From positions 992,001-1,056,000 of the forward strand of contig NW_027271524.1 in NCBI RefSeq assembly GCF_040938485.1: a DNA stretch of 64,000 nucleotides. The letters run 5' to 3'. The stretch is from Diadema antillarum (lineage: Eukaryota). The notes under the pieces were generated by a model. The model did not search any database, was not told the origin of the DNA, and saw nothing but the letters and a program-made list of their open reading frames with translations. The translations under genes were made by a program, and so were the position numbers. Positions within the stretch are counted from its first letter, which is position 1. Each line of letters starts with the position of its first letter. Below, piece by piece: positions 41,776 to 64,000 of the stretch.

Positions 41776-42266
41776 AGTCTCACGTTTTCAAACTGGCATT
41801 TGGCCCCGCTTCATGTATCAGATTCAAACTGCCTCATGTGACGGCATCAAGTCAAAACAGTTGTGAAAGTAGGCCTTCTATCTAAAAAAGCCAAGTGAAG
41901 CAAGGGGTGGACATCATCTGGGTTTTTGTTTTGTTTTGTTTTTTGTTGTGGATTGTGCACAACAATGAAAGAGTGGACTACATGCTAACAGGCTTCCCAG
42001 TCCATCACAAACAGATTTGTACAGGATGTACATGTACATGCACTGATATACACATTTACTGTACATACAAAACACACACAAAAAAAGATGAATTCCACAT
42101 ATAAACTCCTTATTTGTAGTTTGAGTCACTATAGTTTTAGTCGCTGCACTGAAGTGAAACAAACAAACAAGCAAACAAGCAAACAAAACAAACACAAAAC
42201 AGAAAGAAAAATGCCCCGCACCATGTAGTCATTGCATAGTCCTCTGAATGTTAACCATACATTTAA

Positions 42267-42628
42267 AGGGATGGTATAGTTCTGGTTGAGATGGGCATTA
42301 AGACTTTAATACTTTAACATATGAAATATTAAAGGGCATACAATTCTAAGAGGAACTAAAACTTTATTTGATGAAAATCAGTTTTGAAAAGGCTGAGATA
42401 TCCACATTTGTGAACAAAGAGGTCCTACTAAAGGGTGGGATTCATCTTTTATTAGGACTACTTTGTTTTGCTCTGTTTGTGGATACCTCAGCCATTTCAA
42501 AACTGATTTTCTTCAAATTAACTTTTGATTCCTATCAGAAGGTTTCATATACTTAGTAAGTGGTTTCTAATTATCTCACACAAAAGTTAAAACCTGAATC
42601 CCTGTCTCAACCAAAACTATACCACCCC
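42267..42628. mobile_element. Kolobok-like MITE, family A (copy 5)
   Basis: TTAA flanks, family TIRs and body. Confidence 0.8.
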
Positions 42629-42900
42629 TTAAAAGACCAAAGGATATCATTATGGGGAAGGTACAGTTCTGTGCATAATATCTTGCCTTTGAGTGATAAC
42701 GTCTTTGTCCATGAAATACATGTATGAAATGCTAAATTGCCTGAGGTACAGCATCTGAGTCATGTAACAGTTGGTAAGTCAGTTCTTTATCCTGCAGAAA
42801 ATGAGATAGCTCTCAAGATCACTTCAAAAACAAGCACTGACCACATATTCAATAATGTGACATAACGCTGTGGTTATGATATCATGTGGAAAGGACCGAT

Positions 42901-42960
42901 TTCAATATTATCCAGCAAGCTTTTTCCCCTTTCAGCACATTCTGGGATGCAATCATTTCA
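42901..42960 (+). repeat. Left arm of an isolated 60-bp inverted repeat (partner 45875-45934)
   Basis: 58/60 identity to the reverse complement of 45875-45934, with abrupt boundaries. Confidence 0.95.
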
Positions 42961-43071
42961 TAGAGGGCGCTACACGGCAGGCGGTCACAAGAGTCTGCAT
43001 GACGCCATCTCACATACAAGCCCGCTGGCTAACATCGATCGCCGCTTCAGCGAATCAGCCTCGCACGAACA
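42936..43071 (+). CDS. Candidate 136-nt internal exon (AHSGMQSFHRGRYTAGGHKSLHDAISHTSPLANIDRRFSESASHE), unrecognised product
   Basis: CTTTTTCCCCTTTCAG acceptor, GTATGA donor at 43072, GC/CpG-rich; a second frame (HILGCNHF...) is also open. Confidence 0.35.
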
Positions 43072-43600
43072 GTATGACTCAACTCTCTGTATGCATGGGT
43101 ATATCACACTGGCATATACATTGCACAGACATACGCACACACACATACACACACAGACACACACACGTACGCACGCACACAGCGCAGCCTCTCGCAGTCT
43201 CTCCCTGGCGACGCACGATGCCTGCCCAGCCAGGCTTGACGTCGCTCATCTTGATGTCTTTCTCGCCTTGCGCTCCCCGGCATCAGCCAGATGGCTAGGT
43301 AGTTGAAGGCGATGCTGAAATGAGCCTACCACAGTCGTTTCTTTGTTCGATACCTGCAGCAGCGGGAGTATGGCAGAGTCGTCTGAGCGGCAGCGGGGGG
43401 AGACTTACCCCGTGTCGCCATCGAACAGGTTATTATACACGCAGGGATGATATGTATACGGAGCGCTCTCTCTCTCTCTCTCCTTCTTCCTCTTCCCATC
43501 TCCTTCACTCTAGCATTTACGTAGCCATGCTTCGCTGCACAGCTGGGATTATGTTCACCGAGACAGGGTTTGCACATGGCATCACATATATCATACCAGA
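42960..43600. promoter_or_regulatory. CpG-rich, transposon-free island
   Basis: Visibly high GC and CpG relative to flanks; contains a (CT)n tract and a minus-strand ATG...GGG|GTAAGT. Confidence 0.4.
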
Positions 43601-43697
43601 GTCATTATGAATTGACCAAAATGTTAATATCCACACAAAGAATTGATGCTATAAAACCAGTCACAAAATTCTCCATTTAATAGGATGTTCCCTTAAA

Positions 43698-43782
43698 CCC
43701 ACAGAGGACGAGTCCTGAGTAAACTCGGGTAAGTTTCTATGAGAAATGTGTGTTGTAGCAACATCAGTTCATCCTCAATGGG
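43698..43782 (+). mobile_element. 85-bp piggyBac-like MITE
   Basis: Family homology; right flank TTAA, left flank TAAA. Confidence 0.8.
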
Positions 43783-44119
43783 TTAAAATGACATCAACGA
43801 TCCCACATCAACTGAGACAATGAAATCCATTGGCTGGAATATGAATTGACTTCTTGTCTATTATTCCTTCAAGGATTAACTTGTGTTTGGATGACAATCC
43901 TGCACAGTTCTCTCGTAATTACAGTGAACATGATTACAATCGCATCTATCTCTCTTATAAAAGTTAAGCTATGATAAGCAAGAAATTACTAGGATAACTA
44001 AAAACACACAATAAATACAAAAAAGTTTCGATGAAATTCCATCATACACACATGAAACATCAAAAGTTACAGACAACTAGACTTTTACATTCCAAGTCCA
44101 TCACAAAATGCAGTCCACA

Positions 44120-44470
44120 GGCCACAAACAAGACACCAAGAGAAATATAACCTTTGACCTTAAAGGCTAAACACTGAGGGCAGCATCAAAATGATGCTGC
44201 CCTTTTAGTGATGTTACCATCTTCACAAAATTTGAACAAAATTCATCCAGAAATATGACTAGCAGAATGCACACAAGCAGACCCTAAGAAATTGACCTTT
44301 TCGTGTGTAAAGACTGAATGAGCCAGGGCACTACACCAAATTCGTAGGTGGCTAGATTCTTTAAACTACACCTCCACAGCAAATTTGGATAAAATCCTTC
44401 AAGAAATGTGGCAAGTATTGCACACACAAACTTTGGTGCGTGGGCAGTGCTCAGCATATTAACACTGCTA
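44120..44470 (+). mobile_element. Modular repeat with ~150-bp degenerate tandem units and hairpins (pearl/Tsp/HINE-like architecture)
   Basis: Two related units (CACAAAATTTGAACAAAATTC...GCACACAA and CACAGCAAATTTGGATAAAATCC...GCACACACAA), a 12-bp hairpin at 44177-44203, a terminal GCAGTG...CACTGC stem; similar TGACCTT-rich fragments near 5800-6070, 45230-45420 and 61840-62600. Confidence 0.4.
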
Positions 44471-44558
44471 TATAAAATCTAAAATATCCTCTGGTCCTAT
44501 GGGGGGGGGGGAGGGAATAAGATGAACATATCACTGCCTTTAATGCGTGTAATGCTTG

Positions 44559-44590
<32 letters not shown>

Positions 44591-44660
44591 AAGACTATTC
44601 AAACTGCCAGTGAAAAATCACATTATTGGAAAAAAAAATTCCTGTGGCAATACAGTAAAA

Positions 44661-44673
44661 GTTGCTAGGCAAC
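44661..44673. promoter_or_regulatory. RFX X-box (GTTGCTAGGCAAC)
   Basis: Canonical 13-bp RFX site (reverse complement GTTGCCTAGCAAC). Confidence 0.55.
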
Positions 44674-44781
44674 AGTGCCAATAGCCATTCGATTGCAGAA
44701 AAACTGCAGACCAGCTGTGATTTTTTTTCTTAACTTTGTGTAAAGAGTGCTCCAATGATTTGCAGTGAGACCGTTCATTCC

Positions 44782-44825
<44 letters not shown>

Positions 44826-45874
44826 ACACAAACACAAATCACTTTTAATACAGTATATCATCTATGAAATATGTAGCTAGCCAGCCAGGCTTTTTGTTAA
44901 ATCATAGTCATAGTTGCAGGCAGCAAGTTCTCAAGCCAACTGTGCGTGTGCACTGCAGAACAAAAAACCTGCAATTCCGCTCTAGCGCCCAGTGCCATTT
45001 TCAAGAACAATGGCTGATTAAGGATTGTTTTTTTTCCATTGAAGTATTAGTGGACAGGTAAAATATCATAATTTTCATTATGTGGAAATAATTTCCTATG
45101 AAAATAGGCTAAAGCATTTCTTTTTTCTCCATCGAGATTTTCTTTGGCAAGGATATGAAAACTTTTCCATTTTCTCACATTTCCTGTATATTCAGGCTAA
45201 CATGATCTCTTGTAATTCCAGTGAAATATACACCATTCCAAAACTACATAAATTTAAGTTTTCCCCGTGCTGAAAGTTAACACTGATGATGATATCAGCT
45301 ACTCTCCTGGCATGTGGTATACTTATCTGGTCAGGATTCAAGCCAAACATGTACCGGGTATGCAAGATTTGGTAAAGATCATTTTATTTGAACAACTTAT
45401 ATTTTGGAAAGTTTCTGTTTTTCTTCAAAAGTATGCATTGCCATGAAAACTAAGTTTAATATGGGAATATTTTTCCTGCAAAATATGGTAGTTAATGGGT
45501 GTCCCTATAAATGGAAGCATTGATTTGAATCAATTCTTCTTTTTTTTTCTGTTGACACGATGAAGTATTAGACCTCAATACGTCACCACCTGTTTTTGCT
45601 AGTTTGTTGGAATAAAATCTAATTTCATAGCAAAGACAAAGATGCATAACAACTGAGTAGTCAATGCCTGGACTAAGCAAATAGAAGAATATTTGTATAA
45701 ATATAAATCAAAAGCAGGGCAAACAGCATGCATGGCCCAAAAGGGCTGCCTGAAAGGGAATTCACCCCAAACAATATGCAGAGCCAATTAATGCCAAAAT
45801 GTTAAAACACATCAGAAAAGTTTGACAAATCAGATAATGACCATTCTGAAGTAATTAATTTTAAACATTTGCGG

Positions 45875-45934
45875 TGAAATGATTGCATCCCAGAATGTTC
45901 TGAAAGGGGAAAAGGCTTGCTGGATAATATTGAA
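45875..45934 (-). repeat. Right arm of the 60-bp inverted repeat
   Basis: TGAAATGATTGCATCCCAGAATGTTCTGAAAGGGGAAAAGGCTTGCTGGATAATATTGAA is the reverse complement of 42901-42960 with 2 differences. Confidence 0.95.
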
Positions 45935-46299
45935 GTCACAACAGTGCAATTATATTAAAAAAATAAAAGGAGAATTCCAAATATCTTCATTTTTCTCGCA
46001 CAATGATGAAAAATCTTTTGACTAACTTGATTCATAAGGAAGGGAGAATACAACTACCCTTGGCATATGTCTCTAACAACCTTTAGAAGAGATCATAAAC
46101 TTTTTCACACCAAACGAACCACCCTTGTTTGCTTTTAAAAACTTCACTGAGGCTTTCAACCATTTCAGCTCTGAACATGAAAATAAGAATGGACATAGTA
46201 CGCAAACCATGGCTATGAAAGGTCCACATCTGATGATATACTACAAATTTTTTTTTAATGTATATAAAAAGGCATTTAGTATAACTGATGACTGAAACA

Positions 46300-46570
46300 T
46301 AAAGATGATAGCACTGATGCTAATCACAATCATGAAAATACTTGTCACTGTCATCACTGCAATGACTATTATAATTAGTAAAACTGCTATATGTATGCCC
46401 ATTACTTATTACTACACAGACGTGGTTATCATTGCTATTGTTATTACAGTCATCATCATAATCATTGTAATATTGTTAACATTATCACCATCATCATCAT
46501 CATCATCACTATTGTCATTATTATCATCTTGATTATCACCATTATAACTGTGATCACTGCAGCTGTTATT
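46300..46570. repeat. Degenerate (ATC/ATT)n low-complexity tract
   Basis: Direct reading; source of poly-Ile/poly-Ser ORFs. Confidence 0.85.
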
Positions 46571-46842
46571 GTCATATAGACCTGCTCAGTTATTCAGGGC
46601 ACTTTCTATGTTAATGTCTATTTTAGCCGTAATTTGGAGGGGGGAGGGCAGGCTTCAGTATGCCTATCAATAGTTGACTTATGCGCTGATATAGCAATGC
46701 ATCTGACTCATTACATAATCGACTGAATCACATTTTGTTCTTATACGTATTTTGATATAATGAATATAAAATGATATTTTGTCCCCAGTTATGGCCAACA
46801 TAAGTTACAGTGCTTTAAAAGCAAATAGGTCTATGACAATAA

Positions 46843-47388
46843 AGGGCTTTTTACACTTGTGTTTCTTAACCCCGGACTTTCTCTGACCCAGGACTATCGT
46901 TAGTCCCGTACCAATTTTTTCAGCTTTTTACACTCGCCAATTAGTCCCGTACTATCTCTTGTCCGGGGCTAAGGAGAAAACTAACCTTTTTACACTCATA
47001 TTTCTTAGCCCCGGACTTTCCAAACCACATGAATATTCATAATTACGCTGTGTACTGTATGCGTACACGCACGCACCGGCAGCACTTGATAACCTCGTTT
47101 CTGATTGGTCAGTGAGGGTCGCACTTCGTCTCCGTCGCTTAGCCCAGGATTATTTTTTCGTTCTGTTTACACTCACTTGCTTGGCACCGCAATTGCGGTG
47201 CTAACCCCTGCTATTTTGCAGGGCCAGATAGTACCGTACTATCGGTGGGGCTAGCCCACTTTGGCAAAAACGAGTGTAAACAGAAAGTGGGCTAAGGATA
47301 GTCCCGTACCAACGGTGGGGCTAAGGCCCCCCCTTAGCCCCACCGTTGGTCCGGGGCTAAGCAAAAATTTACAAGTGTAAAAAGCCCT
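46843..47388. mobile_element. PIF/Harbinger MITE, 546 bp, intact
   Basis: Perfect 18-bp TIR AGGGCTTTTTACACTTGT; TAA duplicated on both sides; internal TTACACT and TAGCCCC/GGGGCTA reiterations. Confidence 0.9.
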
Positions 47389-63140: not shown

Positions 63141-63512
63141 AGGGGTCATATAGTTCTGGCTGAAATCAAACTTCAGGTTTCTAACATTTCTTGGTGAGAT
63201 AATGACAAACCTCTTATGAAATGATTCCATGAGGAATTCAACATTTATTGGATGAAACTTGGTTTTTGAAAAGGCTAAGATATCCAAACAGAGCGATCCT
63301 AATAAAAGGTGGGACCCACCTCTTATTACGATCAATTTGTTTTACTTTGTTTTTGGATGTCTAAGCCATTCCAAAACTGATTTTCATCAAATAAACTTTA
63401 AATTCCTCTTTAATAGAATGGTATGCTTTGTACTATTTCATAAGTGGTTTCTTAATATCTCGCAAAAAGTTAAAAGCCCAATCCTCATCTCCACCAGCAC
63501 TATACCATCCCT
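63141..63512. mobile_element. Kolobok-like MITE, family A (copy 6)
   Basis: Family body and right TIR with TTAA; left end diverged (ATAA flank). Confidence 0.75.
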
Positions 63513-64000
63513 TTAATCATTGGTCTATCTTTCGGAGACAAAATCTGTGCTTTCACAGCGAGTGGAACCTTTGCAATCTTGTGTGCTTGTGCTGGTTGCA
63601 AGACAAACTTCTTGGTTTAAAAGCATATAGTTGTTAACTTCAACGCGTATATTGTTTTTGCTTTGTCGTCGATTTTAAGAGTGTCATTGATGATATCATT
63701 ACATCTTTACCTGGTTCGTTTCTTTTTAAAGGGTATCACAGTTACATAAAGTTCAACTTACGACAGCAGGCTCATCAATTCACAAGCCAGAGGGAGTTCA
63801 CCTCTAGTTTGAAGCACTTATATATCTATTTTATATAAACATCCTGATTTTCATCTAATAAAACACTGGCTGAAATTGGCTGAGTTTGCTCACTGGCACC
63901 GATTATTGTTAGGGCCCCCAATTGGGGGGGGGGGGGGATCATTTTATGCAAAAAAGCCACCAAATTTTACAATTTTCTGGTAAAATTTCAGCTTTTATAT

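What the first reader, a model, noticed from the sequence alone, without database searches (positions are those of the whole stretch)
42901..45934. 60-bp downstream antisense element that could mask a candidate exon's 3' splice site: a possible long-range RNA splicing switch
Seen: 42901-42960 and 45875-45934 are inverted copies (58/60) with sharp edges, no target duplication, no transposon termini and no other copy in the window. The left arm covers exactly the polypyrimidine tract, the CAG acceptor and the first 25 nt of the 42936-43071 candidate exon. In a plus-strand transcript one difference becomes a G-U pair (59/60 paired), and the only true mismatch falls on exon position +1 (42936). 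Known: long-range intronic duplexes that sequester splice sites control exon choice (for example Dscam docking/selector pairing) and create ADAR substrates. Inference: either a functional structure-based skipping or editing switch, or a recent templated inverted insertion from DNA repair that has created one. A decayed TIR pair capturing 3 kb of host DNA is a third option.
Basis: partly seen in the sequence, partly recalled or inferred. Interest (0 to 1): 0.75.

Follow-up and report, generated by a model that had tools for sequence, protein, structure and literature searches.

The report
Lone short inverted copy, sea urchin
A 63-base stretch at the edge of a CpG-rich island in this sea-urchin genome has one near-identical upside-down copy 2.9 kb downstream; the pair is real and unique, but nothing shows it covers a used exon, so it is most likely a harmless copying slip in DNA repair or replication and not a splicing switch.

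Summary
42898-42960 and 45875-45937 are inverted copies (60/63; core 58/60) with sharp edges. They are the only repeat pair of at least 92% identity and 40 nt in the 64-kb window. In DNA contigs of two species the arms lie at single-copy depth, while transposable elements nearby pile up 1,000 to 100,000 times deeper. A second individual carries the right arm. A relative about 8% diverged carries the left arm in place, so the left arm is the older copy.

The splicing-switch reading has no support. No RNA run holds the stretch. The "exon" 42936-43071 is as diverged from the relative (8.6%) as the sequence upstream of it (7.3%). A neighbouring block, 43187-43454, is clearly conserved (2.6%). A frame-0 peptide of the "exon" found no real protein relative. 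By my simple criteria, similar acceptor + open frame + donor candidates occur about 25 times per strand in this window.

The pair has no target-site duplication, no transposase and no extra copies, so it is not a transposon. The best reading is a DNA-level templated inverted insertion, probably neutral, which could form a -106 kcal/mol RNA duplex only if both arms are transcribed together. Whether the relative also has the right arm could not be read. Interest is low.

The parts
42898..42960 (+). Left arm, the older copy and the likely template. It consists of 38 nt of pyrimidine-rich sequence ending in CAG plus 25 nt beyond, and it lies at the left edge of a CpG-rich island.
   Evidence: It is present in place in the relative organism B: contig record 17 covers 42503-43102 without a break, with 6 differences inside the arm.
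45875..45937 (-). Right arm, an inverted copy of the left arm (60/63) set in AT-rich single-copy sequence.
   Evidence: It is spanned with both flanks by a contig of another individual (X2 record 14, 45681-45986, 1 difference). There is no microhomology at the inner junction and at most 2 nt after a mismatch at the outer one.
42936..43071 (+). It is unverified and probably not an exon.
   Evidence: Frames 0 and 2 are open. A-B divergence is 11/128, against 20/273 upstream. Frame 0 shows 5 synonymous and 4 non-synonymous codon changes, which is weak. There is no real protein hit and no Pfam hit.
42900..43550 (.). CpG-rich, GC-rich island (GC 0.47-0.56, CpG observed/expected 0.8-0.9, against 0.1-0.4 around it). 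The left arm sits on its edge.
43187..43454 (.). The best-conserved block of the 5-kb stretch: 7 differences and no gaps in 268 nt against organism B. It may be a promoter or a first exon. There are ATGs at 43320 and 43370 and a GT at 43430 on the plus strand. There is also an ATG at 43249 on the minus strand.
   Evidence: (record 18). The exon reading is inference from the sequence only.

Best explanation
This is a one-off DNA-level event. [quoted passage not shown] The copy has since picked up one or two changes and the source one. The pyrimidine tract and CAG inside it are incidental. The pair is probably neutral. If a transcript ever runs through both arms, they would pair into a very stable duplex. 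Shown: the repeat, its uniqueness, its sharp edges, the older status of the left arm, and the presence of the right arm in a second individual. Inferred: the copying mechanism and the neutrality.
For: The pair is unique in the window and far beyond chance. Both arms lie at single-copy depth in DNA contigs of two species, while neighbouring transposable elements reach 10^3-10^5. The edges are sharp with unrelated flanks, and there is no target-site duplication. The left arm is contiguous with both its flanks in the relative B, so it is the ancestral copy (record 17). At 42921 the right arm carries the letter that B's left arm has, so the copy was taken before the left arm of A changed there. 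At 42936 A-left and B-left agree and the right arm differs. The arms differ by 3/63, no more than the 7-9% neutral A-B divergence, so the pair fits a young or moderately old neutral duplicate. Reverse-complement copies of nearby sequence with dissimilar flanks are the known product of template switching (PMC5453318, PMC8421209), and such events can create RNA hairpins with no selection involved (PMC8794818). Nothing marks the covered site as a real exon.
Against: Microhomology, present at most junctions of described templated insertions (PMC8421209), is absent at one junction here and is at most 2 nt after a mismatch at the other. The distance of 2.9 kb and the length of 63 nt exceed the short-range events those papers model. 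I could not show that the right arm is absent from the relative. Depth figures hint that B has alignable sequence from about 45898, inside the arm. Both transition differences give G-U rather than A-C on the plus strand, the pattern expected if pairing mattered; with two sites this happens by chance one time in four. No RNA data could be examined, so neutrality is not shown.
Confidence: 0.6

Rival explanations
1. This is a functional long-range RNA duplex. In a plus-strand pre-mRNA the distal arm pairs with the pyrimidine tract, the acceptor and the first 25 nt of exon 42936-43071. That would hide the 3' splice site or loop the exon out, or make an ADAR substrate.
For: The arms can form a 62/63-paired duplex of -106.2 kcal/mol and neither arm is tied up in local structure. 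Both transition differences are G-U on the plus strand. Frame 0 of the candidate exon shows 5 synonymous against 4 non-synonymous codon changes versus organism B. Long-range pairs that obstruct splice sites are a known class (PMC8052449, PMC7797038, PMC12962786).
Against: No RNA run holds the stretch. The exon is as diverged as its flank (8.6% against 7.3%), while the neighbouring block 43187-43454 is conserved at 2.6%. Neither a real protein relative nor a Pfam hit was found. By my simple criteria, exon-like sites of this kind number 23 on the plus strand and 28 on the minus strand in 64 kb, so a random 60-mer covers one about 5% of the time. The island with its candidate start codons at 43320/43370 may be a promoter, which would leave the left arm upstream of the transcript. 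Base skews give no sign of plus-strand transcription. Known functional pairs are much shorter, with a median of 13 nt (PMC8052449).
Confidence: 0.05
2. This is a scar of a 2.9-kb inversion made by staggered breaks, which leaves an inverted duplication of the staggered stretch at the two ends of the inverted segment.
For: The geometry fits: two inverted copies with sharp edges bracket a segment, with no target-site duplication. The mechanism is known from Drosophila inversion breakpoints (my own knowledge, not checked here).
Against: In organism B the left arm runs straight into the same interior sequence as in A (record 17 covers 42503-43102). Contigs of B also lie on 43187-45704. A post-split inversion in A is therefore excluded; only an event older than the A-B split remains possible.
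Confidence: 0.07
3. This is an older inverted repeat that predates the split from organism B and is kept alike by gene conversion or template switching between the arms, with or without function.
For: In run X4 the depth in bin 45908-46074 (53.6) and in its two neighbours fits one contig lying on about 45898-46077, which would begin inside the right arm. The right arm shares five letters with A-left against B-left (42939, 42940, 42956-42958). That pattern is what concerted evolution would give.
Against: The same five sites are explained equally well by two clustered changes in B's left arm. The contig in question is not listed, so its extent rests on arithmetic from depths. B's listed contig stops at 45704 with 94 unlike letters beyond it, which points to a structural difference next to the arm.
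Confidence: 0.15
4. These are the terminal inverted repeats of a decayed DNA transposon that captured 3 kb of host DNA, or a fragment of a dispersed repeat family.
For: The two inverted ends bracket a segment.
Against: There is no target-site duplication of 2-10 nt. Both arms are at single-copy depth in two species. No third copy exists in the window even at 3 mismatches. Pfam finds no transposase in the window's ORFs of at least 60 aa up to 60.1 kb. The interior holds a conserved single-copy CpG island.
Confidence: 0.03
5. Reverse-transcriptase-mediated capture: a piece of unspliced host RNA was copied onto the end of a retroelement insertion or into a break.
For: An earlier first-reader note on this genome (s1-215035, unchecked) reports a Penelope element carrying an inverted copy of a host exon. 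The copied piece spans what would be an intron-exon border, so it did not come from spliced mRNA.
Against: Neither a reverse-transcriptase or other Pfam hit nor any Rfam hit such as a hammerhead ribozyme turns up beside the right arm or elsewhere in the window. The flanks of the right arm are single-copy.
Confidence: 0.05

Closest known systems
Templated insertions from polymerase template switching (MMBIR-type MMB-TI, PMC8421209; four-point template-switch mutations, PMC5453318; hairpin-creating switches, PMC8794818)
   Same: A stretch is copied in reverse complement from nearby sequence on the same chromosome. It is inserted with sharp edges between dissimilar flanks. The result is a near-perfect inverted repeat that could fold as RNA without any selection.
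   Different: The template lies 2.9 kb away and the copy is 63 nt long. The described classes are mostly shorter and take their template from within about 100 bp to a few hundred bp. Junction microhomology, usual in those classes, is 0 nt and at most 2 nt here. Absence from the ancestral allele was not shown.
Long-range complementary regions that regulate splicing (human PCCRs, PMC8052449; ATE1, PMC7797038; Dscam1 docking and selector sites, PMC12962786)
   Same: Two complementary boxes lie kilobases apart, one of them over a splice-site-like motif. If transcribed together, they would obstruct that site or loop out the sequence between them.
   Different: The known cases are short (median 13 nt, about -17 kcal/mol), conserved across species, often carry compensatory changes, and lie in genes with documented alternative splicing. 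Here the pair is 63 nt long and near-identical, like a recent duplicate. Its conservation is unknown and there is no evidence for a gene, an exon or a transcript.
Inverted repeat pairs of mobile elements in introns (for example inverted Alu pairs that drive A-to-I editing, exon skipping and circular RNAs; my own knowledge)
   Same: A long, near-perfect intramolecular dsRNA would form from two inverted DNA copies as a by-product of DNA-level duplication.
   Different: These arms are not mobile elements. They are a single pair at single-copy depth, much shorter than an Alu.
Inverted duplications flanking inversions made by staggered breaks (Drosophila; my own knowledge)
   Same: Inverted copies with sharp edges and no target-site duplication bracket a segment.
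   Different: The segment is not inverted relative to the sister species at the left junction.

Membership tests
Templated insertion by template switch (MMB-TI / four-point model) | The inserted stretch is a reverse-complement copy of a nearby stretch on the same molecule | tested here: met
   60/63 identity to the reverse complement of a stretch 2.9 kb upstream
Templated insertion by template switch (MMB-TI / four-point model) | Sharp edges with dissimilar flanks | tested here: met
   Flank identity falls to random level at both ends
Templated insertion by template switch (MMB-TI / four-point model) | Microhomology or microhomeology at the switch junctions | tested here: inconclusive
   0 nt at the inner junction; 2 nt (TC) after one mismatch at the outer junction. 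Later mutation may have blurred this.
Templated insertion by template switch (MMB-TI / four-point model) | The insert is absent from the ancestral or outgroup allele, while the template is present | tested here: inconclusive
   The template (left arm) is present in organism B (record 17). The state of the right-arm site in B could not be read: the listed contig stops at 45704 and an unlisted one lies in 45908-46074.
Templated insertion by template switch (MMB-TI / four-point model) | The template lies within short range (about 100 bp to a few hundred bp in the described sets) | tested here: not met
   2,914 nt lie between the arms. This fits only the longer-range FoSTeS/MMBIR-type switches, which those papers do not model.
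Long-range RNA structure regulating splicing | The two boxes can pair stably | tested here: met
   -106.2 kcal/mol with 62/63 paired on the plus strand. The arms have no strong local fold.
Long-range RNA structure regulating splicing | Both boxes lie in one transcript and the covered splice site is used | not testable with these tools
   No RNA run holds the stretch. The one run of unknown kind that was laid (X16) has no contig on 42735-43569.
Long-range RNA structure regulating splicing | Complementarity is conserved across species, ideally with compensatory changes | tested here: inconclusive
   B's left arm differs at 6 sites. B's right arm could not be read.
Long-range RNA structure regulating splicing | The regulated exon is under constraint or annotated | tested here: not met
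   Exon divergence is 8.6% against 7.3% for the upstream flank. No real protein hit and no Pfam hit.
DNA transposon (TIR pair) | Target-site duplication directly outside the arms | tested here: not met
   None for 2-10 nt, at either the 63-nt or the 60-nt boundaries
DNA transposon (TIR pair) | Multiple copies in the genome, and a transposase or related autonomous copies | tested here: not met
   Single-copy depth at both arms in X2 and X4. No third copy in the window. No transposase domain in the ORFs.
Dispersed repeat family | Many copies, with contigs piling up on the stretch | tested here: not met
   The bins with the arms read 0-26 (left) and 5-54 (right), against 10^3-6x10^5 on the transposable elements at 42234-42734, 43570-43903 and 46743-46900

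The most novel reading that the evidence does not exclude
This is a newborn structure-based splicing or editing switch. A template-switch insertion in this sea-urchin lineage made a 63-bp antisense box 2.9 kb downstream of a real 3' splice site. The pre-mRNA now folds over that site and skips or edits the exon. It would be a caught-in-the-act example of how long-range RNA regulatory structures arise from a single mutation.
Probability: 0.04. Interest if true: 0.6.

Novelty: new member of a known kind. Interest (0 to 1): 0.18.

Why it matters
As it stands it matters little. It is one more example of a short templated inverted duplication, a known mutation type. It does show that such events can place a very stable potential dsRNA stem in a genome in one step. 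It would matter only if transcripts run through both arms and use 42936 as an acceptor. In that case it would document the birth of a long-range RNA structure over a splice site, at a length (63 bp) far above the known conserved cases. The practical lesson for the scan is that an acceptor-like motif plus an open frame plus a GT is common in this genome, at about one per 2.5 kb per strand by my simple criteria. That combination should not be taken as an exon without RNA or conservation evidence.

Tried and rejected
- **RNA evidence.** The single run search found no RNA holder. Reads were laid on two DNA runs and two runs of uncertain kind. X16 has only two short unique pieces here. One of them ends in a small hairpin at 44181-44205, which I read as a contig break and not a splice.
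- **Protein identity of the exon.** An 87-aa frame-0 translation was searched against 1.84 billion representatives. It gave one hit, at 23% identity, to an internally repetitive 413-aa protein, which I judged spurious.
- **Exact look-up of ORFs.** Ten ORFs around both arms were looked up in the 15-billion-protein collection, in the hope of fetching the relative's contigs. None is on record, so I did not spend search for homologous proteins on them.
- **Gene context.** Pfam scans of 300 stop-to-stop ORFs of at least 60 aa (window 1-60,121) gave nothing better than E = 0.002. Exons shorter than 60 aa would be missed. Rfam at gathering thresholds gave nothing.
- **Metagenome scan.** A 29-nt core of the arm had no match.
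- **Larger decayed duplication.** Sensitive BLAST of both arm regions against the window found nothing beyond the 63 nt.
- **Transposon ends.** There is no target-site duplication.
- **Base skews as a strand indicator.** They are dominated by CA microsatellites, so I do not rely on them.
- **Earlier notes of the scan.** There are none for this window.

Full report
**Observation.** The sequence is as described. 42901-42960 and the reverse complement of 45875-45934 agree at 58 of 60 positions. The match runs three bases further, to 42898-42960 / 45875-45937 at 60/63. A search for the 60-mer with up to three mismatches finds just these two places, with none expected from shuffles. A self-BLAST of the whole window shows this is the only pair of at least 92% identity and 40 nt in 64 kb. 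All other repeats in the window are multi-copy element families at 60-91% identity. The flanks become unrelated at once on both sides, even with sensitive settings. There is no target-site duplication. On a plus-strand RNA, two of the three differences are G-U pairs and one (42936) is a C-U mismatch. The predicted duplex is -106.2 kcal/mol on the plus strand and -98.4 on the minus strand. Neither arm folds on itself.

**Is it a repeat family or an artefact?** Earlier notes of the scan say the genome is a sea urchin. I laid contigs of four public runs on 41900-46900.
- The bins holding the arms have single-copy-like depth in a second individual of the same species (X2) and in a relative (X4).
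- Neighbouring elements at 42234-42734, 43570-43903 and 46743-46900 reach 10^3 to 6x10^5.
- X2, from another sample and study than the best holder, has a contig on 45681-45986 with one difference. It spans the right arm and both junctions, so the right arm is not an assembly error.
- The relative (organism B) has a contig that covers 42503-43102 without a break. The left arm therefore sits in the same context there and is the older copy.

**Direction and age.** Inside the arm, B differs from A's left arm at 42921, 42939, 42940 and 42956-42958.
- At 42921 the right arm of A has B's letter, so the left arm of A changed after the copy was made.
- At 42936 both left arms agree, so the right arm changed there.
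- At the other five sites the two arms of A agree against B.

This fits a copy made on A's lineage. It fits equally well an older copy plus two clustered changes in B, because three sequences have no root.

The arms differ by 3/63. Neutral A-B divergence in this stretch is 7-9% (pieces 17 and 19-24). The duplicate is therefore about as old as the species split or younger.

I could not read whether B has the right arm. B's listed contig stops at 45704 with 94 unlike letters beyond it. An unlisted contig lies in 45908-46074. Arithmetic from the depths would start that contig near 45898, inside the arm, but that is a hint only. The table of differences was truncated, so my counts are lower bounds.

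**Is the covered site an exon?** I found no support.
- No RNA run holds the stretch.
- A-B divergence in 42936-43063 is 11/128 (8.6%), against 20/273 (7.3%) just upstream. By contrast, 43187-43454 has 7 differences in 268 nt and no gaps.
- Frame 0 has 5 synonymous and 4 non-synonymous codon changes, which is the best of six frames but not significant. Four of the changes are CpG transitions.
- An 87-aa frame-0 peptide found only a spurious repetitive hit among 1.84 billion representatives.
- 300 ORFs of at least 60 aa across the window have no Pfam match, and Rfam finds nothing.
- By my own simple criteria, strong acceptor-like sites number 57 on the plus strand and 64 on the minus strand in the window. 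Sites followed by an open frame and a GTR donor number 23 and 28. A random 60-mer would therefore cover one about 5% of the time.

**Context.** The left arm sits on the left edge of a CpG- and GC-rich island at 42900-43550. The conserved core of that island, 43187-43454, has stops in all frames around 43296-43325. It also has candidate start codons at 43320 and 43370, followed by a GT at 43430, and an ATG at 43249 on the minus strand. I read this, by inference only, as a possible promoter or first exon. If a plus-strand start site lies there, the left arm is upstream of the transcript and cannot pair with the right arm in cis.

**Mechanism.** The anatomy is a reverse-complement copy of nearby single-copy sequence, with sharp edges, no duplication of the target and no element features. 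That is the product of a template switch with return, or of fragment capture at a break (PMC5453318, PMC8421209). Such events are known to create RNA-hairpin-capable repeats without selection (PMC8794818). Three points do not fit neatly:
- the 2.9-kb distance,
- the 63-nt length,
- the near-lack of junction microhomology.

An inversion by staggered breaks is excluded for the time since the split from B, because the left junction is colinear in B. A transposon reading fails on target-site duplication, copy number and coding content. A retroelement-mediated capture, suggested by an unchecked note on another piece of this genome, has no support here.

**Comparison with known systems.** The pair would work like the long-range complementary boxes that obstruct splice sites (PMC8052449, PMC7797038, PMC12962786) if it were transcribed as one RNA. 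It is not shown to be a member of that class. Co-transcription and splice-site use are untested, conservation is unresolved, and the exon shows no constraint. It is also several times longer than the typical conserved pair (median 13 nt) and looks like a recent duplicate.

**Verdict.** The repeat is real, unique and unlikely to be functional. I put 0.6 on a neutral templated inverted insertion and 0.15 on an older pair kept alike by conversion. The inversion, retro-capture and transposon readings get small shares, and the splicing or editing switch gets about 0.05. Interest is low.

Noticed in passing
window 42262-42634: A palindromic, MITE-like element with nested inverted arms (42262-42309/42587-42634 and 42344-42406/42478-42540). 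Related copies lie at about 504-892, 14356-14744, 16262-16650, 23991-24272 and 63201-63516. Contig depth on it is 10^4-6x10^5 in both sea-urchin species, and many contigs switch strand at its centre.
   Followed up: partly
window 43689-43787 (also 9380, 16740, 29935, 34227, 59272, 62199, 62342): A roughly 99-nt element bounded by TTAACCC...GGGTTAA, with at least eight copies in the window at 73-88% identity and high contig depth (bins 43570-43903). One copy lies between the two arms.
   Followed up: no
window 46845-47385: A CpG-rich repeat block with CTTTTTACAC-type units at 46847, 46925 and 46986, and an inverted unit at 47366-47385. Internal GTCCCGTACCAACGGTGGGGCTA motifs form hairpins (47299-47359). 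Contig depth is very high from 46743 on.
   Followed up: no
window 43187-43454: This is the best-conserved block of the stretch (2.6% against 7-9% versus the relative, no gaps), inside a CpG island at 42900-43550. It has candidate start codons on both strands and may be a promoter or first exon.
   Followed up: partly
window 42939-42940 and 42956-42958: The relative's left arm differs from this genome by two clustered multi-base changes (AT>GC and TTT>CCC). These look like single multi-nucleotide events and not like independent substitutions.
   Followed up: no
window 45704-45900 and 46080-46575: Contigs of the relative stop aligning at 45704, with 94 unlike letters beyond, and are almost absent from 45705-46575 except for about 45900-46080. 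There is a structural difference between the two species right next to the right arm.
   Followed up: partly
window 13500-13572: A tRNA-Arg(TCT) gene lies 136 nt before an assembly gap at 13709-13843.
   Followed up: no
window 44181-44205: A small perfect hairpin (GGGCAGCATC...GATGCTGCCC). A contig of run X16 ends inside it, which is probably a graph break and not a biological end.
   Followed up: no
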